From the NCBI GenBank assembly GCA_035221665.1, contig JAVHYY010000112.1:310001-374000 (forward strand): a stretch of DNA of 64,000 bases, in the 5' to 3' direction. Position 1 is the stretch's first letter, and each line of letters starts with the position of its first letter. This document shows, piece by piece, positions 1-60,636 of this stretch. The notes below the pieces were generated by a model. That model was not told the origin of the DNA, made no database searches, and was given only the letters and a program-made list of their open reading frames with translations. The position numbers and the translations under genes were made by a program. This stretch comes from Okamejei kenojei (Eukaryota).

Positions 1-390
1 AATGGTTTTCCTATCCAGGTCCAAATCAGCAGAGAACCTGGGCGGGAAATCTGGAGACAGATCTTGCCCGTCCCTGTTGAATCTTTTCAGTAAATATCGA
101 GGATCTTCTCCCGGTCGTTGGACGTACCAGAATAGCGTGAAACCTGATGTGTAGGTTGAGGTGTAATTGCAGCTGAGCGTTATTGTTTGCCCGTCCTGCC
201 CAGTTAATTCAGATGGATGCTGTGACACGGAATCTTCGCCAGCAGTCCCTGAAACGCAGATTATTCGAAATGAAGTGAAATGACCAGAGCGGACTTCTAT
301 TTTATTTTACGCTGACAATTCAAACAGAGACTCACCAGGAAGGGCAATCATTATCAGCAGAAAGGAACACGAGGAACAAGAGGAACACAT
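1..390 (-). CDS. TCR alpha/delta-type V gene segment, 3' end outside the window (leader exon 390-336, V exon 248-1)
   Basis: Leader MCSSCSSCSFLLIMIALP ends at a phase-1 GTGAG donor. An 87-bp intron ends in tttcAG. The V exon reads GTAGEDSVSQHPSELTGQDGQTITLSCNYTSTYTSGFTLFWYVQRPGEDPRYLLKRF...RFSADLDLDRKTI, with LSCNY, WYxQ and RFS motifs. Absent from the ORF track. Confidence 0.9.
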
Positions 391-1278
391 GATGTCTGCT
401 TTACAGTTAGAATACAAATCGTAGGTTACTTCTTGGAAATGTTACCTTTGCTTTCTTGCAATGCAGAATAAACTCAAAACCGAGGGAGAAGAGGGCGGTG
501 TTCGGGCAGGGATAGGCTGGGTATTAACCGCCGTCATACGGGGACCAATGAGAATGAATATTGTGAAATGATTGGATGGCTGAATCAACGTCAGTTCATT
601 CCTTGTCTCACTGAGTATATTTGAGAAAATAAATAACGAATGAGCAAGGAGGGCAGAGGCCGCCAAGGATTACGTAAGCGCATACTATTTCGTTTACAGG
701 TGTGTGTGGTAATCATAACGAAATATACCTTAACACTAGAAGCGCAAGCGATTTTATCGAACATGGCATTTTGTCTGTACGTGAAGGTGGTCTTTTTTTA
801 TTCTGAGCGTGGCAGGCAGAATTTTCATTCCTTTAGACTAATTGCTCGGATGAAAGGTTGTTCCAAGGAAGAATGTTCCGCAGATGTGTTTTATAAGCGG
901 CACAGCAGGAACGCGTACCTTAGTCAGGCAGGCAAAAAACCTGAAACAGTTTGAACGGTCGAATCGGGCAATGTGTTCCTCTATTAGGAAATACTTGAAA
1001 AGGTGAATCTTTCGCAGATGTAATGCAAAATGTCAATATTTTGGGTATGATGTGACTCAGTAATTCCATGCGCAGAAAACGGCAAGAAAATGGTTGCAAT
1101 TTATTATAAATTGAGTTCAGAGCTTTCAGAGCGAGGTGGGAGTTGCATTTTCCGTCCACACCGGGCGGCGTGACGGCGTAGAATTAAAGCGTGCCTTAAT
1201 GATCGACGTACCGAGCTCGAGCGACTTACCAGCCTTATCCAAGAGCTCTTCCGTTCGTTGAGGGGCTCCAGAATAAAA

Positions 1279-1292
1279 GCGCCCTCTATTGA
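1279..1292 (-). promoter_or_regulatory. candidate CTCF-binding motif
   Basis: Minus strand TCAATAGAGGGCGC resembles the CTCF core; about 0.9 kb upstream of the V leader at 390. Confidence 0.35.
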
Positions 1293-2529
1293 GTTCTCAC
1301 TGTAACTCCCAGCGTGGACTTTGCGTCTGGGATCCAAGTCAAGTTGAGTTTACTGTTGAACGCAAAATTACCGCAAGGTACAGTTACCATGAAATTCTTG
1401 CTTGCAAGCATCCGCTCAGCCACGTAGACGCTGACAACGCATCAAGCTTTAATTATACATACATTTTACACAAATAATGTACAAGACCGTGAAATTGAAA
1501 TGATCATGAAAAACAAGGCAGCAGTGCAAAACATAATTCGAAAAATAGTTATGGGACAGGTGGTCAGCGTGTTTCATGCATGGGGTACGATTAGGGATCA
1601 GGGCGTAGGTGGAATTACCTGATCTTTGCAGTAAATAATCTGTCTCTCAGCGTAGTGGGGTTGGGACTTCTAACGTCCGTATATCCAACCCGTCGGTGTC
1701 GAATGGGTCCCTTATTGTACTGAAATGTTACGAGATCCATAGCACTGAAATATTCAGTGGATTCAGCGTTGAGGCATTGAGGTCTCCAATTTTCGGTAAC
1801 CCCCCCCCCCCCACACTTTTCTCCCTCTCTTCCCCGTCCCAACCTGGTACGTATCAATTTCGCACAATATTCCGCCATCTTCTCCCTTTCCCCTCACCCC
1901 CTTCTACCTATATCCCCTCCTCTGATTTCACATTTATCTCCTCTTCTCTTCTTACCTTGCACTCTAGCGTCTCCTTTATATCTCTAGTTTGTGTCCACTC
2001 GTCTGCTAATCAAATTCCTTCTCACCTGCATCCACCTATCACTTGCCGTCCCCCTCTCTTCTCTATCTTCCCCTCCACTAATGTTCCGACCTGAAATGTG
2101 CCCTCACCATGTGATGGTGCCTGAGGTGCTGAATAACTCCAGCACTTCCTGTTTTTCTCCAGATTCCAGCATCTGCAGTCATTACTTGCGTAATTGGCAA
2201 ACTGAGGCAAACAACTATTACATGGCCTCTTAAATCCCTTCAGAAACAATCAATTATGCCTGCCTGGACCAATTATCGTACAACAACAATGCTGGCAGGG
2301 GCATTTTGATTCCTTGAAAATAAAAATAAGAGAATGTACCGAGAAATAGCAATTTCGTATGGCATGTAATAAGATAATTTGTTTCCCATATAGAGTAAAA
2401 ATTCTAACAGCAAGGACAACCATTAATTTGAGTCGGCTTGAATGAAGTGCCAATGCATGTTAATATGTTCGTTCATCCCAATAACTGTTGTAATATAATA
2501 GAAACATAAATTATGTCTCCGACCGGAAA

Positions 2530-3329
2530 AATTTATCGATTAATTTAAAAGGGGATTTTAGAGCTCTCCGAACCTAGTCTGCGTCCCCACATAGAACCAC
2601 GTGTTAGTGCAGGAGCTTAGAATCTCCAGCAGTTATCCGCTTCTTTGCAGGATAAACCTTGGGTCGTTGGCATTGGTGCCGTTCGGATAAATATTGTGGG
2701 CAATTGCACGAAAATAAAATTTACAACGAACGTCAACCACTGTAGGATGAAACTTCCTGAGATCGTCATGAGTAAAATAACGGATGTTCTCCAGTATTCT
2801 ATCTCGAGGTCGTTCTGTTTACGATCAGCAGCATCACGAGGGGAACGCATTGATTCAGCATCCAGTGTAACCATTCATACACTATCCGTGTCATTAAAGT
2901 GTAATTGGCTTATTTAAAGCCGCAGAAACAAGGCATGTTATCAATGAGCTTCATGGGCTCGTATTCAAAGTAACAGTGAATAGTGTTCAAACAGCATACG
3001 TTTCCTATGACGATGGGTGACGTCTTCTATGTGGAATATCTACTATTCAGCTCTGGCAGCAAATGACAATTAACCGATTTAAGGTGATTTCAACTGTTAA
3101 CCATGCATAAGCATCTTTGGAAAGCCAGCTTAAGGTTATAAACGATACTGCAGGATGGAGTGGTAGACAAAACACTATAGGAAATACATCGTCCGAAGCC
3201 GCCTTAATATCACAGCGGTGTTCATGACCAAAACAAAATCCGCCACCGACACCTAGACCAGGTAAAACGTGACACAATTCTCAAGGCTGCGCCTTCCTTT
3301 AGAGAGAATCGCAATTGTCACCTGGTTAG
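2530..3329 (-). pseudogene. GPR139-like GPCR pseudogene (exon 2)
   Basis: Acceptor cctacAG is followed by ANQVTIAILSKGRRSL, then LSWLSKDAYAWLTVEITLNRLIVICCQ, KQNDLEIEYWRTSVILLMTISGSFILQWLT and LEILSSCTNTWFYVGTQT. In-frame stops and frameshifts; homologous to the intact copies at 45156 and 58847. Confidence 0.9.
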
Positions 3330-3417
3330 CTGTAGGGGAGAAGAGAATTGATAGTTAGTACGCTCTCCAAAGCCGACAATACCAAAGCATTGAGAGCCTG
3401 CAATTACATTTTTACAT

Positions 3418-3590
3418 TTAAATACTGAGGGAAACGGAGGTTGTGGACTGCTCGAACATGGGGAACATTTTGCACGTATCTAGGATGTCCAATCTCGGAG
3501 GAAATGTATATGTTTCTATAAGATCCTTTCTCATCCTAAATTCCAGTGCATACAAGCCCAGTCGACCCATTCTTTCCTCATATGTCAGGC
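3418..3590 (-). mobile_element. CR1 LINE 3' fragment
   Basis: GLTYEERMGRLGLYALEFR...DLIETY matches the CR1 ORF2 C-terminus seen at 30132-31148. Confidence 0.8.
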
Positions 3591-3824
3591 CCTGCAGCTT
3601 TGGTCTGTCTCTCCATCGCTTGATGCTAATCGGGTTATCGCGCATATTTCATTAAGGTTTGAAACATTCATCCTGTGCACTCGTGGCTCGCGGAATTAAA
3701 CTAGGGCACACTATATTTTACCGCCAATGAATCAGTGCCTGTTAAATAAGAACGTGGAAACTAACGACCAGGAAGACAAATAAGGACGTCAGTAAGTCAG
3801 ACCAGACATGTTGTGCATGCAAAT

Positions 3825-3926
3825 AAACAGCTCGGAATTTGCTAAGCTGCAAATTCCGAGCTGTTTTTGCAAATTCAATAGCAAAATTTAGCTTATTAAC
3901 AATAGCTATTGAATTTGCAAAAACAG
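3825..3926. repeat. two overlapping perfect inverted repeats (18 bp and 22 bp arms)
   Basis: AAACAGCTCGGAATTTGC (3825-3842) pairs with 3849-3866; CTGTTTTTGCAAATTCAATAGC (3861-3882) pairs with 3905-3926. Confidence 0.9.
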
Positions 3927-4427
3927 AATATAAAATGTTGGGAATGCTTGAAAGTGAAGTTAATATTGCTGGAGAGAGAAACACTGTGTTGCGGATCAGA
4001 AGCCTCAATAAAGGAGGGAACATTAATTACAAAATCTATTACAGTGTTTTCTGGTAGCTGATAAGGTCTAGGCAACAGCAAGGGTTGTATTTCTTTTCCG
4101 CGTAGCTTCATTGAGGATTGCTGGCGATTGACGCGGAAGTGAGCTCACACAGCTTGATATGAGACCAGACTAAACCTGAGATTGAACCAGATAATTGTCC
4201 ATTTAATTCCATTAGGAATTATTGACCGTCATGGTTTATACAGGTACATCTTCAGAGTCGCCTTCCTTTGCGTTGATGTTCTCCTCTCTCACATTACTGT
4301 TCGCAAAGACGTTCTGCATTGTGTGAGTCCGTGGCTCTTTCCACGCATGCGTTCGCCTGACACAAATGCAATAGGTTGCTTGGGGGAAAGTACCCAGTCG
4401 CATTCGCGTAGTACGCGGTGAAGAGCC

Positions 4428-5603
4428 ATGGTGATAATAATACTGTTGCTGTTACTGTCGATGCACTGTGAGTATTGCTATCTATATTCCAATAGCGCGC
4501 CTGATAGCTAACATTCCGACTCAGCGACGAAGGAATGGGAATACGTTTCAAAATCGGGATGGCGTGTGGCTTGGAGGGCAACATCCAGCTGGTGGTATTC
4601 GAAAGTATTTTGTTGCCATTGTCCTTTCAGTTCTGACAGGTGGTGGATTTTCAAGATGATGTTTGAGTAGTCAAACAGAATTGCCGGAGATAGACAGCAT
4701 TCCGCCTTTACCAACGCTCTCAGTTGCCATATATTTTAACCTGCCTTCCCACTCAGTTACTGACCTGTCTGTCCTGAGCCTCCTCTACTGTGAGAATGTG
4801 GCCTCAAACTAATTCGAATAGCAGCACCTCCTTTATTCGCTTGGGCAGCTTACCTCCCTGTGGTATGAATATTGATGTATATTATTTCAAGTAACCGTTG
4901 CATTCTCTCTCTTTCCGCCCCTCCCCCATTCTAGTCGTCTTGCTAGCTTCATTATTTGTATCACCTTTATTATGACCTCGACCACAGCTAACAATGGATC
5001 ATTGTGGGCTCTACCATTCGAATGCATCCTTCGGACCATTGAACACTTGTGATTTTTTGTCACGAATTCAGCAATATATATATAGAAATGCAACATTTAC
5101 CCGACTTACAAGAAACACATTCATATATCCGGAGGGAAAATATCGGTGAAGGCATGAAGTAGAATTTTTTCTAATTGTTTCATTAACTTTGCGGTTCTTC
5201 GGGACATGTGTTCTATGACTGCTTGTCGACCGTTGTAGATTAACATTTGTTTTTGTGAACTTAAGTTAATTCGTTAGCTTTCTACCTCTGTTCATAATAC
5301 TGTTTCCTCAGCAGGTGCCCTTGCGGGCGAGGTGCTTCAGTCTCCCGCCTCGCTTACGGTCAATCCAGGAGATGCGGCGCAGTTCAATTGTGTTTTCAAT
5401 GCCTCGGTGGTATCCGCCTTCTACTGGTTTACAGAGAGTCTGGACGGGCGGCTGGAGCACGTCCTGACCATGAAACTCAGCGATAGAAATGTAGTAGGGC
5501 GACACGAGATCATGCTGAGTTCTGCTGAAAATCGAGGCTATTTGGCTCTAAGGAGGACGGAAGTACGGGATACAGCGCTGCACTACTGTGCGATCCAGGT
5601 GTT
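4428..5603 (+). CDS. divergent antigen-receptor V gene segment (leader exon 4428-4467, V exon 5315-5603)
   Basis: Leader MVIIILLLLLSMH ends at a phase-1 GTGAGT donor and joins after ctcagcAG, giving C-ALA-GEVLQSPASLTVNPGDAAQFNC...YWF...DTALHYCAIQV. Both Ig cysteines and the Trp are present, and a consensus RSS follows. Confidence 0.85.
4700..5040 (+). mobile_element. Penelope-like element fragment in the V leader intron
   Basis: Decayed match to the GIY-YIG 3' end at 19040-19217 (gacctgtctgtcctg...cagcacctc...ttcgcttgggcagcttac...ggtatgaatattg). Confidence 0.7.
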
Positions 5604-5642
5604 CACAGTGATGGCAATGAATGGGGTCGCTGTACAAAAACC
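5604..5642 (+). other. 23-bp-spacer recombination signal sequence (perfect consensus)
   Basis: CACAGTG, 23 nt, ACAAAAACC. Confidence 0.97.
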
Positions 5643-6529
5643 TCGTCTCTGGAACATTTCATCCTGCACACCATATTTCGTTATCCTACCGCAATCAGTC
5701 TAAAGGCGAGTCCCTTCGCCAATCCTTTCCCTCTAGAGCTGAGGCCTGGCGGATGATTGAGAAGAAGCAGAATTACCTAAATAGTATCATTAAACTTGAG
5801 TGTAACCGCTGGAAACCCACGCGTTGTGGCGTCAGATCCTTCTTCAGACTGAGCCCCCTCAGCCTGAAGAAGAGTCTGGACCCGAAACGTCACCTATTGC
5901 TTTTCTCCGGAGACGATGCCTGACCCGCTGCGTTTTTTCCAGCATTGTGTGCCTATTTTCGAAATAAGTTGCGCAACTTCTTCAGAAAAACATACATGGA
6001 AACTGCGCAGCGCTGCATTTTAAACCAGGAATAAGTTGCCCTTTGAAAGGACAGGGATGAGATTTAGTGGGCGTTATAGACGAGCAAGGGGAAAGCATAT
6101 TCAATAACCGGTCGCAGTTAAACATACAAGGGAGTAGAGAAGGGGATAGACGACGGAATCCTCGGTTAATTTGTACAAATTTGATTGTTCTGTTCAGGGT
6201 TTCCAGCAAATATCTGAAACCTCATATTTTGTGATTTCGCTGCGACTGGTGATCGCTGCCAGGTAAACTCCACTGACACAGCTGGTAGCAGGTGCCTTCA
6301 GCTTAGCCAATGAACATAGCTGGTGGTAAATATGCGGTTTTTGATAAAATTCAGCACAGAATCTCGGTACACGTGACAATAATCAACAAATACCAATACA
6401 AATAGCATCAGGTAGACACAAAATGCCGGAGTATTTGTGTGAATGGAATGGAGTGGAGAATGGAATTTGCCCCTCTCACGTTAAATCCAGTATAAACCTC
6501 ATACCGGCATCCGGATTTTTTGTGGGCTA

Positions 6530-6552
6530 TTTCCGCTGACGTCATTGTGGTT
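6530..6552 (+). promoter_or_regulatory. candidate T-cell regulatory module (ETS/NFAT-like, CRE, RUNX)
   Basis: TTTCCGC, palindromic TGACGTCA (6537-6544) and TGTGGTT (6546-6552) are contiguous. Confidence 0.4.
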
Positions 6553-6658
6553 TCAGCTCGGGTTCTTCTCACTCAGAGAAAATGTTTCCGAGCCAGTGCC
6601 TGTGGCCAGTTGCAAACTGCCGGCAGCGCGTAACATCTGTGCCCCAGTAGCCTGCGGC

Positions 6659-6994
6659 AGTTATTGTACGAGGATTCCGTGCGTTCACGTCCCTGCCAGA
6701 CTCTGCACCGTAATACATCGCCGTTTCAGGCAACAGCTGCGTAATGGTCAATTGATACTCCGTCACCGATTGTTGGAGCACATCAGAAAATCTGCCTTTA
6801 GCGAAATTCGTCGCATATTCAGAGGCGTTACTATTGTATCTCCCCAAATTAAGTTTGGCCCACCCGGCTCTCTACTGGCGATAACAAACTGTATAACATG
6901 GGGAAATTGTGTGTAGGTACAAGATAAGGTGACGTTCTGCCATCCGTCGCTGCGATTGTTTCCCGCTGCATCAAGGTATCGGCAGAGCTCAGAC
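6659..6994 (-). pseudogene. TCR V pseudogene with degenerate 23-RSS
   Basis: Acceptor ctccAG, then GLSSADTLMQ, (frameshift) NVTLSCTY, (frameshift) YRQ*, then FAKGRFSDVL...YQLTITQLLPETAMYYGA with the second Cys changed to Gly. Followed by GGCAGGG, 23 nt, ACAATAACT. Confidence 0.85.
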
Positions 6995-15999: not shown

Positions 16000-16038
16000 T
16001 GTTTTTGTACAGGCTCAGCACCGCAACGAGACGCTGTG
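16000..16038 (-). other. 23-RSS
   Basis: CACAGCG, 23 nt, ACAAAAACA. Confidence 0.93.
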
Positions 16039-16345
16039 GGGCTCAGGGCGCAGTAATACACTGCCGAGTCCTCCAGTTGTGCTTCAGACACAGTCAATAG
16101 GACGATCCGCCCCGAATCATCAAGAGAGGTTGAAAAGTGTTGACCCGGTGAATGTTTCTGGCTTGAGCTGTACTTGCTTATCCAGAGCATAAATTCCATG
16201 GGTCCACCGAAATATTGACGGTACCAGTACAGATACGGAACTTGTGTGCTCGTAGCTGTGTAGTTACAGCGCAGCACAACGACACCACCTTCGCTTACTG
16301 CGATTGCAGCCGATGTCTGTGAAATGGAATCCCCCCGACAATACC
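16039..16345 (-). CDS. TCR alpha/delta V exon (open frame; leader unresolved)
   Basis: After ttgcAG: GYCRGDSISQTSAAIAVSEGGVVVLRCNYTATSTQVPYLYWYRQYFGGPMEFML...VSEAQLEDSAVYYCALSP, with classic TRAV motifs. Confidence 0.92.
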
Positions 16346-20160: not shown

Positions 20161-20169
20161 TGTGCTGCT

Positions 20170-21908: not shown

Positions 21909-22817
21909 CTATTTGATCCATTTCCTAAATGTCTTCAAGGAGGATTGAATCGCATTGTTCAACTGCTTTCTAAATTTGGTCTGCGGCCCAGCATAAATAC
22001 ACGAGTTGGTGCAGGAACTGAGAAGGTCCAGCATGTATCCGCTTTCCTGTAGAATAAACCTGGGGTCATTGGAAATGGAGCCGCTGGCATTGTTATTAGT
22101 GGTAAATTGCACAAATAGAAATTGACAAAATACGCCAACCGCAACAGGAGAAAACTGCCCGAGATTGCCATGAATTATATGATGGACTTTCTCCTGCTCC
22201 CCATCTCCGGGTCCCTCTGTTTGGGACCATTGCTCTGGGCCCGGAGCCTCCTACGAACTCCACTGGCTGACATAATGTATCTGACCGTCAGAATATTGAG
22301 CATGAAAATCGAAACGAACGGGAACAAGCGATTTATAATGCGGTCAAACCAGTCAGAAACGCTCCATACAATCGAAGGATAATATATATATATTTAATGG
22401 TGCAGTACCAGGGTACATCATCAAGGATGTAGGCATGCTCGTATACAAAGTAAGTTGGGACGTTTTACAAACAACACAGCACACATATTATACACACAAC
22501 GCTATTCGCGTTTCTTTCACGTCAATAGCTAAGCTTCAGTCTCTGGCAACGAATGGCGATGAAGCGATCGAATGTGAATGCGACCGTCAACCAAACGGGC
22601 GTGTCCTTGGGCGCCAAGCTCAGGACAATAACGAAACTGCAACCCGGAATGATGGAGAGGAAGCTGACAGGAAAATATAACGCTCCAAGTCGGCTTAATA
22701 TCACAGCGTTGACAATGATAAGGAAATCCGCCACTGCCAGGAACACCAGGTAGCGAGTGATGCATTTGGAGAGACCACATACTCCGAGGGACAGGATGAC
22801 TATCGTTACTAAGTTCA
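21909..22817 (-). pseudogene. GPR139-like GPCR pseudogene (exon 2)
   Basis: After cttacAG: NLVTIVILSLGVCGLSKCITRYLVFLAVADFL...VWLTVAFTFDRFIAIRCQRLKLSY*, then AISGSFLLLRLAY and QESGYMLDLLSSCTNSCIYAG. Stops and frameshifts; no exon 1 found. Confidence 0.93.
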
Positions 22818-23089
22818 CTGTAAGAGAGAGATAGTGGATCAGTAGGAATCAGGCTGCCCTCTACCTCATAAGCGTATTGAGGAAAGGGGAACATTTATTT
22901 TCCCAATTAATATTTATGCTATTGGAATCCCGGAATGGATATCAACTTGTGCTTATAGTTGATTATGCCGGCTGAACTCGCGAATGTTAATCAAAGGTCT
23001 TGATTGCCCGCTTCAATGATCCAGACTGGTAAAGGTCCCCTCGAATACCCACCCACGGGGAACATCGTTCTCCCTTTCACTCGAGTTCT

Positions 23090-29616: not shown

Positions 29617-32600
29617 ATGCACGCGCCTGGAAATGGACCTGTCTTCGCTATTTATTATTCTGCCCTTGCTGCTTTCGGCGTTCCAGGTGATGAGTGAAAA
29701 TAGACTAAACGTGGACAATTAACGTGTGACCGTTCGTTGCTGAGTATTTTAATTGTTCGATATATTTCTCATGATTTCTTTTCAGCCAGCTACCGAGTAT
29801 TACGACCACTTTTCAAAAAGGGAGGGAGAGAGAAAACGGGGCATTACAGACCAGTTAGTCTAACATCGGTAGTGGGGAAACTGCTAGAGTCAGTTATTAA
29901 AGATGGGATAGAAGCGCATTTAGAAAGTGGAAGTGAAATTTAGAGTCAGCATGGATTTACGAAAGGTAAACCATGTCTGACGAATCTTATTTAATTTTTT
30001 GAGGATGTAACTAGTAGAGTGGATAAGAGAGAAGCAGCGGATGTGTTAAATCTGGACTTTCAGAAGGCTTTCGACAAAGTCCCAAACAATAGATTAGTAT
30101 ACAAACTTTACATGATATTGGCGGTTCAGTATTGATGTGGATAGAGAACTGGCTGGCAGACAGGAAGCAAAGAGCAGGAGTGAACGGGTCCTTTTCAGGA
30201 TGGCAGGCAGAGACTAGTGGGGTGCCGCAAGGCTCAGTGCTGGGACCCCAGCTATTGACAATATATATTAATGATTTGGACGAGGGAATTAAATGCAACA
30301 TCGCGAAGTTTGCGGATGACACGAAGCTGGGGGGCAGTGTTAGCTGTGAGGAGGATGCTAGGAGGCTGCAAGATGACTGGGATAGACTGGGTGAGTGGGC
30401 AAATGCATGGCAGATGCAGTATAATGTGGATAAATGTGAGGTCATCCTGTTTGGTGGCAAAAACAGGAAAGTAGACTATTATTTGAGTGGTGACCGATTA
30501 GGAAAAGGGGAGATGCAACGAGACCTGGGTGACATGGTACACCAGTCATTGAAAGTAGGCATGCAGGTGCAGCAGGCTGTGAAGAAAGCGAATGGTATGT
30601 TGGCATTCATAGCAAAAGGATTTGAGTACAAGAGCAGAGCGGTTCTACTGCAGTTGTACAGGGTCTTGGTGAGGCCACACCTGAAGTATTGCGTACAGTT
30701 TTGGTCTCCTAATCTGAGGAAAGACATTCTTGCCATAGAGGGAGTACAGAGAAGGTTCACCAGAATGATTCCTGGGATGGCAGGACTTCCATATGAAGAA
30801 AGACTGGATAGACTCGGCTTGTACTCGCTGGAATTTAGCAGATTGAGGGGGGATCTCATAGAGACTTACAAAATTCTTAAGCGGTTGGACAGGCTAGATG
30901 CAGGAAGATTGTTCCCGATGTTGGGGAAGTCCAGGACAAGGGGTCACAGTTTTAGGATAAGGGGGAAGTCTTTTAGGACCGAGATGAGAAAATCGTTTTT
31001 CACACAGAGAGTGGTGAATCTGTGGAATTCTCTGCCACAGAAGGTAGCTGAGGCTAGATCGTTGGCCATATTTAAGAAGGAGTTGGATGTGGCCCTTGTG
31101 GCTGAAGGGATCAGGGGGTATGGAGAGAAGGCAGGTACAGGATACTGAGTTGGATGATCAGCCATGATCATATTGAATGGCGGTGCAGGCTCGAAGGGCC
31201 GAATGGCCTGCTCCTGCACCTAGTTTCTATGTTTCTATGTTTCTAAAGTGTAATCCTTGGATTTTACCATTTTAGGTCACGATGTTAACTTCATTATATA
31301 TTACTTGACCAGTTTCTGAAGGTGGAGCGGCTGATTTGAATATATTCTCTGATGCACACAGAGTTTGGTGCAAGGCAGGCACTTTTAATTCAACGTCTCG
31401 TTACATTCAAATGTTTATACTTAAATTACTTTTATCCTGTATGTTTTCTTTTGAGATACAAGGTGCTGTAAATACTGGAATCTTGCAGCAAAACATAAAG
31501 TGCCGGAGTGATTTAGCTACTCAGCAGCATCTGTGAAGGCAATGAATAGGCGACGTATCGGATCAGGTTCTGAACCCTTGTTCAGGCTTCTGCATCGACC
31601 AAGAGAATGTTTCCACTAAGCTGCCTGGGGTGGCGTTAGGGTTGCGATAAGCAGAACAAGGGCACAGATGACACATGGGTGAGGGATCCACCCGCGACAG
31701 CATGGGGAGCTACGTTCGCCGAATAAGGGACGTTCTGGATAATCTAGAGTGAAATGCCTCGGCGTGGAAGCAGATGCGGCGGTACTCGAGAGCAAGGGAT
31801 AAGAGGAACTTCTATTCTTGCAAGATAGGAGGAAGGTCTGAAGATGGTTCCCGACCCAAAATGTCGCCGATTTCTTCTCCCTTACTCACCAAAGATGCCG
31901 CCTGACCCGCTGTGTTACTCCAGCACTTTTTGTTTTCCAGTGTATTTTCATTATTTTGTACTTTGATTAAAATATGATATATATTACAGATATTGTGACT
32001 CTGTAATCTAAACCATAAATGCGGCATCGAATTTATACATTTTTTAGCCATAGCAGATTGGATTTCTAGTTTGCGAAGCTCTCCGACTTGTTTCTTATCG
32101 CAACTTTTTTTGAATTGTAGTTCTTATTGTAATCAATAAATTATCACCATATGGATATTTTCAGGCGTTTTTATTGTCGCCAGCCCAGTATGTATCTCAT
32201 GCGTAGCGACGTGATTACACGAACTGAACTCTGAAATCGGTGCATTAATGCAGAAAGTCATGATCTTTATTTCGGCCCTGAATGCTTTCCGTATACCAAA
32301 TGGTTTCGTAGTAATGGTATTTTTGTTAACTCGCTTCAGTAACGAGATATTAACCCCCCCCCCCCCCCCCCCCCCGTGAAAACTACCGCTGGCAAAGGAT
32401 GTCGTGTTTATAATTGGGTTGAGAGGCTGCAATTTTCCACTCAAAAACTGTCTGGAATGGTAAAGTATGATAACATAGATCTGTTGTGAACGGGTGGTCG
32501 ATGGTTGACGTAGTTGGTGGGATGAACGGCCACTTTCCACGATGTAGCTCTGATATAAACTGAACGACGTAACATGAGATGGAAAATATCTTGAAACATT

Positions 32601-34093
32601 TGTTAACGTTCATGTTTGCGAAACCTCTTGGGCCACTGCCATGCCCTTCTTCGAAGGAGTCGTTACGATGACGCTTCGGATGGAGCGGACCCTTCGTCCG
32701 TTTCGAAGGATTCGTTACGATGAAGCTCTGTCAGATTTCTCCGTGACCCTCCATGGCTGGTGGTAGTTTTTTTTTTACAATAAAACCATCTATCTTCATT
32801 ATGTGTTTTCATGTAAACTGGTTACATTCCATGGACTGTTTGCTGATGTATTAAATGATCCATTTGTTATGCGATAATGGGTCTCATATCACACGCATGA
32901 AAATAATTAGTTGATTATACGCGCGAAATTGGAATTATTTTTATCGCTTTTGTGTGGAGCTCAAGTCAATGGGCAATTTTAAGGCGGAAGTGGACACATT
33001 CCGGAAGAGTATGTGTGTCAAGGGTTATGAGGAGAAGGCAGGTGAATGAGGTTGAAAAGTAAAGATATATCAGCCACTATTCAATGGTCGAATAGACTGG
33101 ATCTGCCAGCAAAGTTAGAATGCGTTGCATTTTCTAGTGGCGAAGCTAATTATTAATAACCCGGTCTCTCCCTCTGTCCTGCAGCGAATTTCATGACGAT
33201 TGTGATTCTATCCAAAGGAAGATGCGGCCTCTCCAAATGTATCACTCGCTACCTGGTGTCCATGGCGGTGATGGACTTCCTGGTCATCATCACCGCCGTG
33301 ATCTTAAGCCGGCTTCGGGCTATTTATTTCCCGACCACAGTCCTGTCTACCATTCCGACCTGCAAGGTCCTTATTGTCCTGAGCTGGATTTCAAAAGACA
33401 CTTCCGTCTGGTTGACGGTTGCTTTCACCTTCGATCGGTTCGTCGCCATTTGCTGTCAGAAACTGAAACTAATATATTGCACCGAGAAAATCGCGGCGGG
33501 TGTTATTGCAACGGTCTGTGCGTTAGGCTGTTTGAAGAATGTCCCATTTTATTTTATATATGACCCAGTCTATATAATTGATAATGTACCCTGGTTTTGC
33601 ACCATAAAAGATTCGTACTATTCTTCAATTGCATGGATAGTGTATGATTGTCTACACCGCGTCTTGAACCCATGCCTCCCGTTCCTACTAATTCTGTTGC
33701 TCAATGCTCTCACGGTCAGACATATTCTAGCTGTCAGTGCAGCCCGCAAGAGGCTCCGGGCCCAGACCAAAGATGGGAAAACAGAGTGACCCGGAAATGG
33801 AGAGTCGGCGGAAGTCTATCATTTTACTCATGGCGATCTCGGGCAGTTTTTTGCTGTTGCGATTGACATATGTCGCAAACTTTCTCTTTGTACAAATTAC
33901 AAGCAGCGGTTATGCAACCCGTTCCAATTCCAATGACCCCAAGTTTATTCTCCAAGAAAGTGGATACATGCTGGAGATACTCAGTTCTTGCACCAACTCG
34001 TGTATTTATGGGGGGACACAGACTAAATTTAGAGAGCAGTTGCAGGAAGTGGTTAAGTATCCTTTCTATCTAATTCGTAAGCGGTTAAAATAG
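29617..34093 (+). pseudogene. GPR139-like GPCR with a single 1-bp frameshift (exon 1 29617-29686, exon 2 33185-34093)
   Basis: Exon 1 MHAPGNGPVFAIYYSALAAFGVP ends at a GT donor. Exon 2 reads ANFMTIVILSKGRCGLSKC...FTFDRFVAICC...AQTKDG, then one extra base near 33778-33781, then KQSDPEMESRRKS...NSCIY...RLK*. Confidence 0.9.
29800..31245 (+). mobile_element. 5'-truncated CR1 LINE (RT) in the GPCR intron
   Basis: YRPVSLTS, GVPQGSVLGP, KFADDTKL and a (TTTCTATG)n tail. Confidence 0.95.
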
Positions 34094-45155: not shown

Positions 45156-47375
45156 TTACTTGATTTTGTTAATCAGCTTGAAGGGGTATGTGACCGCATT
45201 TTTCAACTGCTCCCTGAATTTGGTCTGCGTCCCCGCGTAAATACACGAGTTGGTGCAGGAACTGAGAAGCTCCAGCATATATCCGCTTTCTTGTAGAATA
45301 AACCTCGGGTCAGTGGAATTGGAACTGTTGGCATAGTTATTGCTTGAAAACTGCACAAACAGAAAGTTAACAACAAACGTCAGGCGCAGCAACATGAAAC
45401 TACCCGAGATGGCGAAGAGTAAAATGATGGACTTCTTTCTGCTCTCCATCTCTGGGTCCCTCTGATTGTCTCCATTGCTCTGGGCCCGGAGCCTCTTGCG
45501 GGCTCCACTGGCCGCCAGGATATGTCTGACTGTCAGCGCGTTTAGTAGCAAAATCAGAAGTAAAGGGAGACATGGGTTTAATATACGATGCAGCCAGTCA
45601 TAAACTCGCCAGGAAGTTGAAGTGTAATATATTTCTTTAATGCTGCAATACCAGGGAACCTTATCGATAACATACACGGGCTCATAAACAAAGTAAAGCG
45701 GTATGTTTTTGAAGCAGACAAGCGCGCAGACTACTCCAATAACTGCAGCCGCCGTTTTCTCCGTACAATAACCGTGTTTCAGTCGCTGGCAGCAAATGAC
45801 GATGAACCGATCGAAGGTGAACGCGACAGTTAACCAGACGGACGTGTCTTTGCAAGCCCAGCTGACTGCAATGACGACACTGCAGGCCGGATTTGTCGCC
45901 AATAAACTAAGCGGGAAATAAATAGGCCGGAGCCGGCTCAATATTACGGCTACGACAATGACCAGGAGATCCCACAGCGCCATGAACACCAGGTAGCGTG
46001 TGATGCATTTGGAAAGGCCGCATCTTCCCTGGGAGAGAATCACGATCGTCACCATATTGGCTGTGAAACAAACAGAAATACGATGGAGTTATTCATCATT
46101 ATTCCGGCCGCGTCGCCAGTTTATAGGAACGTAGAAACGAAATTCAGTCCTGGTGGAAGTCATTATGGTTGAAAATATTACTCGCGAGGCTTTTTGATCC
46201 CCCCATCTCTTTTTCAGCTTACTCTTCCCCTACAATCGGATGAAATAAGAGTCCTGACACGAAACTTTCGCCTTTCCACATATTTCAGAGTCGTTGCCTG
46301 ACCCGTTTATCAGTTAAAATGAGCACACCGAATGGAAACGTTGCCACATAGCTTATCTTAGTATTCTTTGGTTTTAAATGTTTATGGTTTAGAACGGAAG
46401 AAATGCAAAAAAAAAAACATGTAATTAATATTAAATTGGGAACATGCACACATTCGAAAGCAAACAGTGGAACCTGACCAATGACACACATGAATGAAAT
46501 TATCTGCTGATAATAGACCTGCCTAATCGTTGCCTAAATTCGCTATGACCTTTCGAGGCACAATATAAAAACGTAGGCAAACTTCATTCATACAATGTCT
46601 ACTCCGATAGTAAAACAGGGTTCTGGTACAAAATTGAACCAGGCCGAGGAGAGTGGAGGTGGCATTCCGGCGCGTTCACCAAGATCTCGCAAACAGTACC
46701 GAACATTGAAGCGTTCTCCATTGCCATCCTGACACCTTTCTCTTTGCACTTTCTCTGCTTTCAACTGATTATTTTAAAAATGTGAAGAAGGTCCTCGACC
46801 GGAAACGTCACATATTCCGTTTCTCCAGAGATGTTGGCTGACCGGCTTACTTACTCCAGCATTTTGTGCCAATCTTTGGTTTCAACCAGCATCTGCAGTT
46901 CCTCCCCACAGACATTCCGAAGTCTGATGCAGAAAATTTGGTAAAGCACGAAGACTGCATACGATTCCATTCAAATCAGTGCATTTTGCAATGCCTGCCT
47001 TTGTTACCAACAGAACAAATCGAACGAATGTTAATCTGAAAACTGAATTGTATAATTGATTGCCTTCTCCGTATTGAGTTACTAGATTCTACCAAATAAA
47101 ATGTCAAAGCGAGCAAATATTGGGGAATCTATGCGTTTATTACAAAGTAAGGCAGGTGAAAGGAAAATTAACTTCCAAATTAACAAAGCGTTTCGCTGTA
47201 CGTGACAATAAATAAACTGATCTAACCGATCTAACGAGGGACCTGTAACTAGACGTAACACGGTTTAACTTAGGTTTCCGCCATTCGTTTACTGGGAAGA
47301 TTTACCTGGCAAGCCAAACGCCGCAAGAGTACTGTAATAAACGGCAAAGACTGGTCCATTTCCAGGCGCGTGCAT
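45156..47375 (-). CDS. intact two-exon GPR139/GPR142-like class A GPCR, 324 aa (exon 1 47375-47306, exon 2 46060-45156)
   Basis: Exon 1 MHAPGNGPVFAVYYSTLAAFGLP ends at GTAAAT; after cacAG comes ANMVTIVILSQGRCGLSKC. Seven hydrophobic segments, with ALWD (TM2), FTFDRF (TM3) and SSCTNSCIY (TM7). Confidence 0.95.
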
Positions 47376-49209: not shown

Positions 49210-49713
49210 ATGACTGTTTACTTACATAATCGTGCCATTATGTGTGAACACCGCCTCCCGATCTTCGTTATCATGTCACTTCTCAGTAAGGATTCTCACC
49301 CAGTAAAAATCCTTTCTTCTCACGAATGTTGTCACTTGATTTCTGCCGATAAAGACAATGCTGATGCCGCTTCAATCATATGATTCTGACAATTGCTATT
49401 TTCTCTTAGACTGGAGCCATCAATATACGGTGGAACAGGCCGAAGCAGAAACCACATTTGCGGAGGGAAAATATGTAACACTCAAGTGCCTATTGAAAAC
49501 CAGCGATACACTCCCATATGTTTACTGGTACAAACAGCGACTTGAACATTCTCCGCAGTACCTGATTCAGGTTATAGGAAATAACGTAAACAGGGCGAAA
49601 GGCATCACAGATCGATACTCTGCTACATTCAATAAAACGGCAACGATGGGCGAGTTCGTGATACGTGGCGGCGTGTTCTCCGACTCCGCCCTGTACATCT
49701 GTGCCATGCTATA
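49210..49713 (+). CDS. TCR alpha/delta-type V gene segment (leader 49210-49285, V exon 49410-49713)
   Basis: Leader MTVYLHNRAIMCEHRLPIFVIMSLL ends at GTAAGG; after cttAG comes NWSHQYTVEQAEAETTFAEGKYVTLKC...VYWYKQ...DSALYICAML. Confidence 0.93.
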
Positions 49714-49752
49714 CACACTGGTGCAAAAGTGCAGCGGGTTCGAACAAAAATA
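49714..49752 (+). other. 23-RSS
   Basis: CACACTG, 23 nt, ACAAAAATA. Confidence 0.9.
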
Positions 49753-49783
49753 AGTGCAGCGGGTTCGGTGTTCGTCATAATCG

Positions 49784-50711: not shown

Positions 50712-50990
50712 AAAGTCGTTTGATGAGTGCGTGGGCAGCACGGTGGCGCAGCGGTTGCATTGCTGCTGTACGCCTGGGTTCGATCCTGGCTCTGTACACT
50801 GTTGCACGAAGTGTGTACGTTCTCCGTGACCTGCTTGAGTTTTCTCTGGCAGCTCTAGTTTCCTCCCACACTCTAAAGATGTGCAAATTTTAAGGTTAAT
50901 TGGCTTGGTATAATTGTAAAATTGTCCCCTGATCGCTGGATCGCTGGTGGACGCGGACTCGATGGATCAAAGAGCCTGTATCTCTAAACT
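50712..50990 (+). mobile_element. HE1-like tRNA-derived SINE
   Basis: gggcagcacggtggcgcagcgg (A box)...gggttcgatcc (B box), plus the SINE body. Confidence 0.75.
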
Positions 50991-51169
50991 AATCTGTCTC
51001 TNNNNNNNNNNNNNNNNNNNNNNNNNNNNNNNNNNNNNNNNNNNNNNNNNNNNNNNNNNNNNNNNNNNNNNNNNNNNNNNNNNNNNNNNNNNNNNNNNNN
51101 NNNNNNNNNNNNNNNNNNNNNNNNNNNNNNNNNNNNNNNNNNNNNNNNNNNNNACTACAATAAACCAAT

Positions 51170-56051: not shown

Positions 56052-56565
56052 ATGATGAACAGTTACAGATTTGTATCTATTATTGTCGGACACTTCCTTC
56101 CGCTGTTCATTATCTTGACACTTCTCAGTAAGATATTTCTTGCACGTAAAAAATCTATCTTCCAATGAATGTTGTAACCCAATTGTTGATAGTGGAAGGT
56201 TAATGCCTATGCTGCTTCACGCAATGATATTAATTGGGCCATGTTCAATATTTTCTCTTAGATTCGAGCCATCAAAATACAGTGGAACAATCCGAAGCAG
56301 AAATTACGATTGAAGAGGGAAAGAATGTCACACTAACCTGTACTCTGAAAACCAGTGATACAACGCCGTATGTTTTCTGGTATAATCAGCGGCCAGCTCA
56401 CTCTCCACAGTACCTGCTTCAGGTTCTGGGAAATAAGATATTCAGGAACACGGACGTGACCGATCGCTTCTCTGCTAACTTTTATAAAACTGCGAAGATG
56501 ACTGAGTTCATAATACGCGACACCGTGATGTCTGATTCCGCCAAGTACATCTGCGCCATGAGTCG
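56052..56565 (+). CDS. TCR alpha/delta-type V gene segment, paralog of 49210 (leader 56052-56127, V exon 56262-56565)
   Basis: Leader MMNSYRFVSIIVGHFLPLFIILTLL ends at GTAAGA; V reads NSSHQNTVEQSEAEITIEEGKNVTLTC...VFWYNQ...DRFSA...DSAKYICAMS. Confidence 0.94.
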
Positions 56566-56604
56566 CACACTGTTGCAGAAATGCAGCAGGCTCGAACAAA
56601 AACC
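56566..56604 (+). other. 23-RSS
   Basis: CACACTG, 23 nt, ACAAAAACC. Confidence 0.94.
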
Positions 56605-56917: not shown

Positions 56918-57800
56918 CTTGGAACTTGGAACTTGGAACTTGGAAAACTTTATTGTCATTCAAACCTTGCCGTCTGAACGAAATTTCGTTGCCTGCAGTC
57001 ATACATATAGTACATAACAAAAACACACAATAAAAACATATTTAACATCCACCACAGTGAGTTCACCAGAAACCTCCTCACTGTGATGGAAGGCAAAAAT
57101 CTTGTCTTTGTCTCTTCCCTCCTTCCTCTTCCTCTTCCTCTGCGCTGAGGCGACCCGGGCCTCCGATGTTGTGACCGCACCGGGTGATGTAAATAAGTCC
57201 CGCGGGTGAGCCGTGCTCCGCGAGCGGCCCGGTTCAACTCCGCGGCCCGGGGCGGTCGAAGCTGCCGAAGTTGCCGCCCTCCAGTCCAGCGGACGCAGCT
57301 GTTCCCACGGCTGCTCCGGAAAGACAGGTCACCATCGTGTGACCTGCGAGCTCCCGACGATGTCGTCCACTCGGCCGGCGGCTGGCGGCCGGGCCTCCGA
57401 AGTCGCTGCAGCCGCCACCGCCACCTGAAAGCCGCCACAGCTCGGAGTCGGGCCGCCGGAACGCCGGAATGCCGGAACGCCGGAACCCGCCGCTGTCCCG
57501 AAGTCGGCCAGCCCCGCGCTGGTAAGTCCTGGCTGGCTCTACCTCCGGGTCGGTCGCAGTTAAAGTTGGAGGCCGCCAGTTCCTCGATAGGCCTCAGCGC
57601 AGACGGAGACGGAGACGGGGGATACGACAAGAAAAGTCGCGTTCCCCCAAAAGGAAGAGACTAAGAACGTTTCTCCCACCCCTCCCACACACATACACTA
57701 CATAATAACTCAAACTTACGCTAAAAACAAGACAAGAAACCAAGAAATAAAAAGAAAAACAGACGGACTGCAGGCGAGCCGCTGCTGCCAGGGCAGCGCC
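56918..57800 (-). mobile_element. GC-rich non-autonomous retroelement with (CCAAGTT)n tail
   Basis: CpG-rich body ending gaatgacaataaa plus a 7-mer tandem tail. Confidence 0.6.
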
Positions 57801-58846
57801 CCCACTCCCTCGTCTGCATGAATCGTGGAAGTAAGTACGTCAGTAAGCAGGGACATCGTGAGAGGTATATTGTATTTTGATCAACGCATTGTACCAGGAA
57901 TAGCGTTGAAGGATAAGACCAATCGCGAACTGACGACGGCAGCGAACGCAATTCACCAGAGTTCTATCTCAATTACACGGGTGACGCCTTCAAGACAATC
58001 CATAAGAGAACATGATCAACGGGAATGCTGCGCACCGCACCGGATGAAAAGTATCATCAATAAGGATGGGGAAACAGCTATTTAATATTTATTTATTTTG
58101 TATTATGGCGGTGGGTTATTTGTATTTTTGTGTGTACTTTTGAAAATGGTTATTAAAATTATTTTTGTCAATAAATAAAGAGACCACGATCGCGGGAAAA
58201 GTACGGTTTTGTCGATTTTTATGCCGAAACTGCAAATTTAGATGCATTCTCTCACAAATTGAGGAGGAAGCATTGAGGTGGATGCGATTTGGCCAATGAC
58301 AGCATTTGGGCAATGACTTCTGCGCTCACGTAATGATTCNNNNNNNNNNNNNNNNNNNNNNNNNNNNNNNNNNNNNNNNNNNNNNNNNNNNNNNNNNNNN
58401 NNNNNNNNNNNNNNNNNNNNNNNNNNNNNNNNNNNNNNNNNNNNNNNNNNNNNNNNNNNNNNNNNNNNNNNNNNNNNNNNNNNNNNNNNNNNNNNNNNNN
58501 NNNNNNNNNNNNNNNNNNNNNNNNNNNNNNNNNNNNTTGAAATGAATCAGAAACTCGTTGCTTCAAAGCCAAATAAAGGTGTCGATTAAATGCTCCTCTG
58601 ACCAACCACGCTCATATTTGTGGAAATTATGAACAGAGAAAGTCTAGTTGACGGAATTTTATTTCGCAACTTCCTTCCCCTAAGATATTATCTGTTTCCC
58701 CAAAGTTGCAACAGTTACTTCCAACAACATGATAATAATATTACAAACAATGACGCGCGATTGACCCGATCATCTTTAATTCTAATGTGGACTGAAAACA
58801 TCCTTTCCTTTATGAACCCTTCGCAAAATTGTATTTGTCTTGACTA

Positions 58847-60636
58847 TTATTTGAACCGTTGTCTAATTATGTTGAAAGGGTATTGAATAGTTGTCTTCAG
58901 CTGCTGTCTGAATTTAGTCTGAGTCCCCGCATAGATAAATGTGTTGGTGCAGGAACTGAGAAATTGCAACATATATCCGCCTTCTTGAAAGATGAACTTC
59001 GGGTCATTGGAATTAGAGGCGCTGACATAGGTATTCACTGTGATTTGCACAAATAGAAAATTTGCAACGTCCGTCGCCCAGAGCAGAATAAAACAGCCCG
59101 AGATGGCGAAGAGCAAAATTATGGACTTTCTCCTGCTCTGCATCTCTGGGTCACTCTGTTTCTCTCCGTTGTTCTTGACCCGAAGTCTACCACGGGCTCT
59201 GCTGGCAGCCAGGATGTATCTGACCGTCAGAACATTGAGTATCAAAATCAGGAGAAAAGGAACGCATGGGTTTAACATCCGGTGCGACCATTCATACACT
59301 CTCCAAGCGACGGAAGTATAAAATATGTCTTTTATGCTGCAGAACCAGGGCACTGTGTCGATAATGTACATCGGTTCAAATTCAAAATAAAACGGGACGT
59401 TTCTCAAACAGGCGAGGAAGCACACGGTTCCTATAACAACGGCCGCAGTTTTCTCGGTGCAATACCTCAGTTTCAGTTGTTGGCAGCAAATCGCTACAAA
59501 CCGATCGAAGGTGAAAGCGACCGTTAACCATACCGAAGCATCTTTAGAAGCGGAGCTGAGCGCAATGATCAGACTGCAACCCGGCGTGGTGGACAAGATA
59601 CTAACTGGGAAATAAATCGCCCGAAGACGGCTGAAAATCACAGCAGTGATGATGACCAGGAAATCCGTCACCGCCATGAATACCAGGTACCGAGTGATGC
59701 ATTTCGAGAGGCCACATTTTCCCTGGGACAGAATCGCAATCGTCAGGACGTTAGCTGAAAGGAAAAGAGTGGGATTATGTAAATAATATTTATCGGTGCC
59801 CGCTCCATAACTGTTTTTTGGGAGCTGACGTGCACTCCCATATTGTTGCTACGAATACAGAGCGTGAAGCGGTTATTGATTTGCTGGTTATCTGTTTCTG
59901 ATATCAAATGGCCACGCGAAACCGAGCTCTACGGTCGATCGCGTGCACTACGATGGACATGTTTTTCTAATTGTGTTTTGGACTGCATGGTTTTCCGCAG
60001 TCTTTTGCATTTCACTGCCTGGTATAATTTACGTGTTATGTATATTTGTGCGTTCTGCCTGTTATGCGGTGGCAAGCATGATTTTAATTATTCTACCAAT
60101 CTCGTCACACTTATGCAAACAGCGAACAAATTGACTTGACTTGTTTATCTTCATACACGACAAGGTTAATTTATAAGTGCATTTACTTACAAATTAACAT
60201 TGACAGGACAATTTTAAGCAAGGCAGTTAAGACATATTGGAACAGGAATGTGCAGTTTCATGAAATAAAGTTAAATCGACAATAAATTATATTTGCAACA
60301 AAACTAAGACATAAGGGTGTCTTCGAAACAACTGTGAAAAGAGGTTATGCCATAAAACAAATTATTGTAATAAACTAAAGACTAGATTTCATAAGTAACA
60401 TCCGTACAAAAGCTGCCTCATGTAAAATTCGCAGTTTTAAGAGCAACGATAAGGAACAAATTATGGAAAATTGTGGTGCAGAACCGAAGGCTAAGGCGGC
60501 CATAGCGTCACATATCAGATCATCATGGACACGGTTACGTATTTATCACCTCTTGTCAAGCTTTACCTGGCACACCGAAAACTGCAAGGATTGTATAATA
60601 AGTGGCGATGATTGGTCCGTTTCCAGGCGCGTGCAT
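58847..60636 (-). CDS. intact two-exon GPR139/GPR142-like class A GPCR, 325 aa (exon 1 60636-60567, exon 2 59754-58847)
   Basis: Exon 1 MHAPGNGPIIATYYTILAVFGVP ends at GTAAAG; after tttcAG comes ANVLTIAILSQGKCGLSKCITRYLVFMAVTD...FTFDRF...FILLWAT...SSCTNTFIY. Confidence 0.95.

What the first reader, a model, noticed from the sequence alone, without database searches (positions are those of the whole stretch)
1..60636. TCR V-segment array interleaved with an expanding cluster of orphan GPR139-like GPCR genes
Seen: six V segments alternate with five GPCR loci (order V, psiGPCR, V, psiV, V, psiGPCR, frameshifted GPCR, GPCR, V, V, GPCR), and both families show birth-and-death turnover. Known: mammalian TRA/TRD loci adjoin olfactory-receptor genes. 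Inference: a different 7TM family fills that role here. V(D)J rearrangement would delete or invert intervening receptor genes, so T-cell clones could differ in GPCR content or expression, or the genes may be chemosensory passengers co-duplicated with the V genes.
Basis: partly seen in the sequence, partly recalled or inferred. Interest (0 to 1): 0.85.

Follow-up and report, generated by a model that had tools for sequence, protein, structure and literature searches.

The report
Orphan receptor genes among skate TCR V segments
In this skate genome, T-cell-receptor V gene segments and old copies of an orphan GPR139-like receptor family really are interleaved, but they look like long-standing neighbours, much as olfactory-receptor and trypsinogen genes sit in mammalian TCR loci, and nothing shows they work together.

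Summary
The window holds six V segments: four complete, each followed by a 23-bp-spacer RSS, one cut by the window edge, and one pseudogene. It also holds five GPR139-like class A GPCR loci: two intact two-exon genes, one with a single +1 frameshift, and two decayed copies. No assembly gap touches a coding exon, and V-GPCR adjacency occurs inside gap-free blocks.

The V segments are TCR alpha/delta-like. The GPCRs belong to a very large elasmobranch family that automated annotation calls "probable GPR139", but the A. radiata orthologue of copy D is only about 28% identical to human GPR139.

"Expanding" is not supported. The paralogues differ by dS about 1.0-1.2 with dN/dS 0.15-0.18, and four copies each have a separate orthologue in another skate or sample. 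This is an old array under purifying selection, with pseudogene losses.

The idea that T-cell clones differ functionally in GPCR content has no evidence.

My best reading is passive co-residence, a new example of foreign gene families nested in TCR loci. This scan found the same pattern on other DNA of this genome, and two other follow-ups read it the same way.

The parts
1..390 (-). V gene cut by the window edge. Leader exon 390-336 (MCSSCSSCSFLLIMIALP, donor GTGAGT). The V exon probably starts at 248 and runs off the window start.
   Evidence: (V-set)
2510..3354 (-). GPCR copy A: a decayed pseudogene with several frameshifts and stops. No exon 1 was found.
   Evidence: long branch
4428..5642 (+). 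V5k, a divergent V gene. Leader 4428-4467, 847-nt GT-AG intron, V exon 5315-5603, perfect RSS CACAGTG-23-ACAAAAACC at 5604-5642.
6650..6950 (-). V pseudogene: frameshifted, second Cys replaced (YYGAE), no recognisable RSS. Bounds are approximate; the profile match is 6701-6939.
16000..16331 (-). V16k. V exon about 16039-16331. RSS 16000-16038 (CACAGCG-23-ACAAAAACA). No leader was found between the exon and the gap at 16614-16757.
21912..22830 (-). GPCR copy B: a pseudogene with in-frame stops, a 2-nt insertion and a 1-nt deletion. No exon 1 was found.
29617..34093 (+). GPCR copy C. Exon 1 29617-29686 (donor GTGATG), exon 2 33185-34093. A single +1 insertion near 33778 lies in the third intracellular loop. 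A reverse-transcriptase fragment (30132-31148) sits in the intron.
45156..47375 (-). GPCR copy D, intact. Exon 1 47306-47375, 1245-nt GT-AG intron, exon 2 45156-46060.
49240..49752 (+). V49k. Leader 49240-49285 (an alternative ATG lies at 49210), 124-nt intron, V exon 49410-49713. RSS 49714-49752 (CACACTG-23-ACAAAAATA).
56052..56604 (+). V56k. Leader 56052-56127, 134-nt intron, V exon 56262-56565. RSS 56566-56604 (CACACTG-23-ACAAAAACC).
58847..60636 (-). GPCR copy E, intact. Exon 1 60567-60636 (donor GTAAAG), exon 2 58847-59754. The gap at 58340-58536 lies about 300 nt beyond the stop codon.

Best explanation
This is part of a TCR alpha/delta-type V-segment array of a skate (family Rajidae or close to it). 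An old tandem array of a GPR139-related orphan class A GPCR subfamily is physically intermixed with it. Both families were spread by ancient local duplication and inversion, and copies have since been lost to pseudogenes. The surviving GPCR genes (D, E, and until recently C) are kept by purifying selection for a function of their own. That function is unknown and most plausibly neural or chemosensory. They are passengers with respect to V(D)J recombination: a rearranged allele in a T cell would lose or invert some of them, with no expected consequence. Trypsinogen genes in TRB and olfactory-receptor genes at the 5' end of mammalian TRA/TRD behave the same way. Shown here: the anatomy, the interleaving, the age of the copies and the selection on them. 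Inferred: the alpha/delta assignment, use of these V segments, and the lack of functional coupling.
For: Anatomy and order. Four 23-spacer RSSs against 0.01 expected. Leader, GT-AG intron and V exon are in frame for V5k, V49k, V56k and the edge V. V56k matches TRAV/TRDV chains best in the PDB. The nearest named relatives of V16k are 'T-cell receptor alpha/delta variable' proteins of a bony fish. V16k, V49k and V56k end in TG at positions 8-9 after the Cys codon, the V-alpha signature described in PMC10322711. GPCR genes C, D and E have GT-AG two-exon models. dN/dS is 0.15-0.18 at dS 1.0-1.2. B, C, D and E each pair 100/100 with an orthologue from another skate or sample, inside a skate-plus-sawfish clade. 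Self-similarity is limited to exons and repeats, so there is no young duplication. Known parallels: OR10G3 as the TRA/TRD 5' borne and trypsinogen genes inside TRB (PMC8945572). Contigs from a second DNA sample of the same species, and from a related species, cover all of 44.8-50.0 kb, which holds GPCR D and V49k.
Against: No expression data of any kind could be obtained, so expression in lymphocytes is not excluded. The near 1:1 interleaving is much denser than in the mammalian parallels. By unchecked scan notes it continues for about 300 kb on this piece. That density could hint at retention for a reason. No J was found in the window (C exons were not systematically searched for), so the locus assignment rests on V similarity alone.
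Confidence: 0.7

Rival explanations
1. Functional coupling in lymphocytes. The GPCR genes are expressed in the T lineage, and V(D)J deletion or inversion gives clones different GPCR content or expression.
For: V segments lie on both strands within one gap-free block, so both deletion and inversion of intervening genes would occur if these V segments are used. Interleaving is dense.
Against: There is no expression evidence. Other members of the family sit on at least four different large contigs, presumably chromosomes, in a horn shark (contig lengths), so the family as a whole is not tied to one locus. Three of five copies here are disabled. Known embedded families (trypsinogens, ORs) have no lymphocyte role.
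Confidence: 0.07
2. A chemosensory family with conserved linkage. The elasmobranch GPR139-like expansion is an undescribed chemoreceptor family. Its position in the TCR alpha/delta V region is an ancient conserved synteny comparable to OR-TRA adjacency, possibly sharing chromatin-level regulation of one-gene choice.
For: The family is very large: 1762 hits at E<=0.001, and the top 120 are all elasmobranch. It shows tandem arrays, pseudogenes and lineage-specific clades and weak Srx/Srw chemoreceptor-like Pfam and Atlas signals. From general knowledge, not tested here, cartilaginous fishes have very few OR genes.
Against: The top 50 genes of the catshark 'brain and olfactory epithelium' library included no GPCR (PMC11979771). 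The genes have two coding exons, unlike most OR/TAAR genes. Linkage in other species could not be tested.
Confidence: 0.12
3. A stranded or decaying V array. These V segments are relics no longer linked to J-C and no longer used, so two dying arrays merely lie side by side.
For: There is no J in the window. One of six V segments is a pseudogene and the V16k leader is unresolved. Another follow-up on this piece described broken V segments.
Against: Four V genes here keep leader, intron, open V exon and a good 23-RSS. The V49k and V56k RSS spacers stay similar despite 71% overall identity.
Confidence: 0.08
4. Assembly artefact. Contigs of two separate clusters were scaffolded together.
For: Five gaps lie in the window. 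Order and orientation across them are unverified.
Against: V and GPCR loci alternate inside gap-free blocks 1-16613 and 37542-51001. Contigs of an independent sample cover 44.8-50.0 kb without a break in depth, though none spans from the GPCR to the V.
Confidence: 0.03

Closest known systems
Olfactory-receptor genes at or among the 5' TRAV genes of mammalian TRA/TRD (OR10G3 is the IMGT 5' borne; PMC8945572)
   Same: A 7TM multigene family unrelated to immunity lies next to or among TCR alpha/delta V segments, and both families evolve by birth and death.
   Different: The GPCR family is different (GPR139-related, not OR). The interleaving is far denser (5 GPCR loci to 6 V in 61 kb). The genes have two coding exons. 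Homology of the two arrangements is not shown.
Trypsinogen (PRSS) genes inside the TRB locus (PMC8945572)
   Same: A foreign tandem gene family is nested between TCR gene segments and is removed on rearranged alleles without known consequence.
   Different: Trypsinogens form blocks at the ends of the V region rather than alternating with V segments, and their non-lymphoid expression is known.
Human GPR139 (PDB 7VUG and related entries)
   Same: It is the only solved structure matched at E<=1e-5. It is a class A 7TM receptor, and the sequence similarity begins in TM1.
   Different: Identity is only about 28% over TM1-TM5. The family has DRF instead of DRY, mostly lacks Pro6.50 and Pro7.50, and some members have Arg instead of Trp6.48. 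It has many copies in elasmobranchs rather than a single conserved gene.
Orphan clade 'GPR210A/B' placed next to GPR139/GPR142 in coelacanth, gar and some fishes (PMC6504862)
   Same: It is a non-mammalian orphan lineage beside GPR139/142, so it is a candidate bony-fish counterpart.
   Different: The relationship was not tested here, and that paper analysed no cartilaginous fish.

Membership tests
TCR alpha/delta V gene segment | V-set Ig domain with Cys23, Trp41 and Cys104 | tested here: met
   Pfam V-set at E 3e-14 to 7e-7; the motif scan finds C...W...YxC in four exons.
TCR alpha/delta V gene segment | Split leader: L-part1 exon, short intron, V exon in phase 1 | tested here: met
   In-frame GT-AG models for V5k, V49k, V56k and the edge V. 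V16k is inconclusive because a gap lies upstream.
TCR alpha/delta V gene segment | Heptamer, 23-bp spacer and nonamer directly 3' of the V exon | tested here: met
   Four found, 0.01 expected; one is a perfect consensus.
TCR alpha/delta V gene segment | Closer to TRAV/TRDV than to other V classes | tested here: inconclusive
   V56k: its best single-domain PDB hits are TRAV/TRDV. V16k: its nearest named proteins are 'TCR alpha/delta variable', but its PDB hits are mixed. V5k scores better against Ig V domains.
TCR alpha/delta V gene segment | Linked to TRAJ/TRDJ and TRAC/TRDC, and found rearranged in transcripts | not testable with these tools
   No J in the window. Scan notes place C exons on other pieces. 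No RNA runs were usable.
GPR139 orthologue | High identity and one-to-one orthology with vertebrate GPR139 | tested here: not met
   About 28% identity over TM1-TM5, E 5e-13. There are dozens of paralogues per species. The name is an automated best-hit label.
GPR139 orthologue | Class A 7TM receptor (PF00001) | tested here: met
   7tm_1 at E 1e-13 to 1e-17 for D and E.
GPR139 orthologue | Canonical class A microswitches: DRY, CWxP, NPxxY | tested here: not met
   Among 125 family members the motif is DRF in 101. Position 6.50 is Thr in 82 and Pro in only 9. Position 7.50 is Thr or Ser in 99 and Pro in 26.
Foreign gene family nested in an antigen-receptor locus | Non-Ig genes located between RSS-bearing V segments | tested here: met
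   this holds within gap-free blocks.
Foreign gene family nested in an antigen-receptor locus | No role or expression in lymphocytes | not testable with these tools
   No RNA holders were found. The runs laid on the stretch behave like DNA.
Vertebrate chemosensory GPCR family (OR/TAAR-like) | Large lineage-specific tandem arrays with many pseudogenes | tested here: met
   three of five copies here are disabled.
Vertebrate chemosensory GPCR family (OR/TAAR-like) | Expression in sensory neurons | not testable with these tools
   No RNA data. A catshark study listed no GPCR among its top olfactory-library genes.

The most novel reading that the evidence does not exclude
A GPR139-related receptor family is greatly expanded in elasmobranchs and has altered TM6/TM7 switches. 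The reading is that it is conserved inside the TCR alpha/delta V array across skates, rays and sharks because the two are regulated together. Either it is a chemoreceptor family using V-array-type chromatin for one-gene choice, or its members are T-lineage receptors whose complement is changed clone by clone by V(D)J recombination.
Probability: 0.08. Interest if true: 0.8.

Novelty: new member of a known kind. Interest (0 to 1): 0.4.

Why it matters
The finding adds a third example, and the densest so far, of an unrelated multigene family woven into a TCR locus, in the oldest living lineage with rearranging receptors. Annotators of elasmobranch TCR loci should expect these genes. The region also offers a natural test of whether genes trapped in a recombining array are tolerated passengers. 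Separately, the GPCR family itself is large, has derived microswitches, and did not turn up in the held literature. Cartilaginous fishes have few classical odorant receptors, so the family deserves an expression survey.

Tried and rejected
- **The look-up of encoding contigs was closed.** The neighbours of the orthologues in other species could therefore not be read, and cross-species synteny is untested.
- **Homologue searches with V56k and V16k** returned 1 and 6 hits, none elasmobranch with contig information.
- **Gnomon models longer than the GPCR** were scanned for fused V-set domains. None had one.
- **Sequencing runs.** No RNA holder was found. The 'RNA?' runs of the species covered only repeats and behave like DNA, so nothing can be said about expression.
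- **Rfam** found only two tRNA-like hits.
- **A tblastn V fragment at 52906-52980** (E 0.056) was not recovered by the V profile and is dropped as noise.
- **My own error.** After I read the V49k leader as lost (ATG to ACG). That was wrong. The true leader is the conserved block further upstream ending CTCA|GTAAG, and it is intact in both V49k and V56k.
- **Literature.** Searches for GPR139 together with shark, elasmobranch or TCR locus found nothing relevant. The supplement of PMC12227049 is not held.
- **Spliced models.** The joined exon 1 + exon 2 GPCR model was not sent to any search. Exon 2 was searched by reference, and the A. radiata orthologue P0001 served as the full-length proxy. Joined L+V and pseudogene read-throughs (X at breaks) were made only inside scripts, to check frames and build the tree.
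- **C-domain exons** were not searched for systematically.
Full report
**What is there**

The window comes from a skate-like elasmobranch. The intact receptor ORF at 45156-46055(-) is 95% identical to a protein of Amblyraja radiata annotated "probable G-protein coupled receptor 139". All 120 best hits are elasmobranch proteins with that automated name.

tblastn with this ORF and with four homologues finds five receptor loci:
- A at 2510-3354(-)
- B at 21912-22830(-)
- C at 29617-34093(+)
- D at 45156-47375(-)
- E at 58847-60636(-)

A profile built from V domains, run on the six-frame translation, finds six V loci:
- one cut by the window start (1-390, -)
- V5k (+)
- a pseudo-V at 6701-6939 (-)
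- V16k (-)
- V49k (+)
- V56k (+)

The eleven elements form six runs. That is what random mixing gives (about 6.5) and not what two abutting clusters give (2).

**Gaps**

Five N runs are present. None lies in a coding exon.
- The run at 16614-16757 lies just upstream of V16k and may hide its leader.
- The run at 58340-58536 lies about 300 nt beyond the stop codon of E.

V and GPCR loci alternate inside the gap-free blocks 1-16613 and 37542-51001, so the interleaving does not depend on scaffold joins. Order and orientation between blocks do depend on them. I did not fill or look up any gap.

**V segments**

Each of the four complete V exons is followed directly by a heptamer, a 23-bp spacer and a nonamer. 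The pattern CACANNG-N23-ACAAAAA occurs four times, against 0.01 expected by chance, always at a V exon end. The V5k signal is a perfect consensus.

Leader exons with GT-AG introns in the right phase exist for V5k (4428-4467, 847-nt intron), V49k, V56k and the edge V. For V16k no convincing leader lies between the exon and the gap. The pseudo-V is frameshifted, has lost the second cysteine and has no RSS.

All are V-set domains. Evidence on their class:
- V56k matches TRAV and TRDV chains best among solved structures.
- The nearest named relatives of V16k are "T-cell receptor alpha/delta variable" proteins of Scleropages.
- V16k, V49k and V56k carry TG at positions 8-9 after the Cys codon. PMC10322711 reports this as the V-alpha signature in cartilaginous and ray-finned fishes.
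- V5k is divergent and scores better against Ig V domains. PMC12227049 reports V exons intermediate between TCR and Ig in elasmobranch TCR alpha/delta regions, which fits.

V segments lie on both strands within one gap-free block, so both deletional and inversional joining would be needed. No J-like segment is in the window.

**GPCR genes**

The genes have two coding exons. A 70-nt first exon encodes MHAPGNGP... and the start of TM1. A roughly 905-nt second exon encodes the rest, with GT-AG borders, in C, D and E.
- D and E are open throughout.
- C has one +1 insertion in the third intracellular loop. Its 94%-identical orthologue P0017 reads through that site, so C is either a very recent pseudogene or an assembly error.
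- B has stops and indels.
- A is heavily decayed.

The joined exon 1 + exon 2 model was not sent to any search tool. Exon 2 was searched by reference, and the A. radiata orthologue P0001 served as the full-length proxy.

**Relation to GPR139**

Human GPR139 is the only solved structure matched at E<=1e-5. The match is E 5e-13 at about 28% identity over TM1-TM5. So this is a GPR139-related orphan family and not GPR139 itself.

Across 125 members:
- the DRY motif is mostly DRF
- Pro6.50 and Pro7.50 are mostly replaced
- position 6.48 is W, Y or R

**Age and selection**

Among C, D and E, dN/dS is 0.15-0.18 with dS 1.0-1.2. DNA self-comparison finds similarity only in the GPCR exons (67-76%), in the V49k/V56k gene pair (71%) and in repeats. 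There is no longer unit that holds both a V and a GPCR.

In a careful tree:
- B, C, D and E each pair at 100/100 with a different orthologue: B and E with Leucoraja, D with Amblyraja, and C with a contig from another sample.
- All five window copies fall in a skate-plus-sawfish clade (97/91) in which sawfish genes are interspersed.
- That clade lies inside a 25-sequence clade (100/100) that holds only a few shark genes.

The paralogues therefore predate the skate-sawfish split. The cluster is old and conserved and has lost copies. It is not expanding. Co-duplication with V segments can be neither shown nor excluded at this age.

The wider family is much larger.

**Reads**

Contigs from an independent DNA sample of the same species, and from a related species (about 5-12% divergent), cover all 30 bins of 44.8-50.0 kb. 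That stretch holds GPCR D, the spacer and V49k. No contig spans from gene to gene. No RNA run holds the stretch, and the "RNA?" runs of the species look like DNA. Expression is therefore unknown.

**Literature**

Searches for GPR139 together with shark, elasmobranch or TCR locus found nothing relevant. The recent description of the elasmobranch TCR alpha/delta-IgH complex does not mention GPCR genes.

Known parallels exist (PMC8945572):
- OR10G3 is the IMGT 5' borne of TRA/TRD in most mammals listed.
- Trypsinogen genes lie inside TRB.

An orphan clade beside GPR139/142 in coelacanth, gar and fishes ("GPR210A/B", PMC6504862) may be the bony-fish counterpart. I did not test this.

**Interpretation**

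The best reading (0.7) is passive co-residence: an old GPCR array trapped in, or grown together with, a duplication-prone V array. The GPCR genes are maintained for their own function and are irrelevant to T cells.

A chemosensory role with conserved linkage is possible (0.12). A stranded V array (0.08) and an assembly artefact (0.03) are less likely.

**Same pattern elsewhere in this genome**

The scan noted the same pattern on other DNA of this genome, including three stretches 32, 125 and 184 kb further along this piece. Two other follow-ups reached the same passive reading. These are not independent evidence.

**Not done**

C-domain exons were not searched for systematically.

Noticed in passing
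window 45156-46060 and 58847-59754; 125 family members: TM6 position 6.48 and a TM7 position co-vary. R or K goes with E or D in 13 of 14 sequences, and W or Y goes with Q in 107 of 110. Window copies: B is R/D, C and D are R/E, E is W/Q, A is W/E. Shared ancestry was not controlled for.
   Followed up: partly
125 family members (alignment): The family has derived class A microswitches: DRF instead of DRY in 101 of 125, Thr at 6.50 in 82 (Pro in 9), and Thr or Ser at 7.50 in 99 (Pro in 26). Asn7.49 and Tyr7.53 are invariant.
   Followed up: partly
window 4428-5642: V5k is a very divergent V (no WYRQ motif, ends CAIQV) with a perfect 23-RSS and an unusually long 847-nt leader intron. Among solved structures it scores better against Ig V domains than against TCR V domains.
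   Followed up: partly
window 46714-47061 and 48454-48975: These are extremely high-copy repeats; summed contig depth is 10^5 to 10^6 against about 50 for the flanks. One lies in the intron of GPCR D and one between D and V49k. Loose ends of reads beside them share a GGGTCTCGACCCGAAACGTCACC-like consensus that recalls a hammerhead core. Rfam gave no hit at the gathering threshold.
   Followed up: partly
window 17799-17853 and 18188-18257: Two tRNA-like matches (30 and 48 bits) lie 330 nt apart on the + strand, just beyond the gap next to V16k. They are probably SINE heads or tRNA relics.
   Followed up: no
window 8982-11639(-), 30132-31148(+), 51342-51821(-), 61509-62210(-): Fragments of non-LTR retrotransposon reverse transcriptase. 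One sits in the 3.5-kb intron of GPCR C. The 8-14 kb region is AT-rich (30-34% GC).
   Followed up: partly
window 49714-49752 and 56566-56604: The RSS spacers of V49k and V56k remain similar to each other, although the two genes are only 71% identical overall. A Logan-derived ORF (P0121, 79% identical to V56k) reads through a similar RSS in another sample.
   Followed up: no
window 33770-33790: The only lesion in GPCR C is a single extra base in the third intracellular loop, and it is not in a homopolymer. The 94%-identical orthologue P0017 is open there. This is either a very recent loss or a sequencing error.
   Followed up: partly
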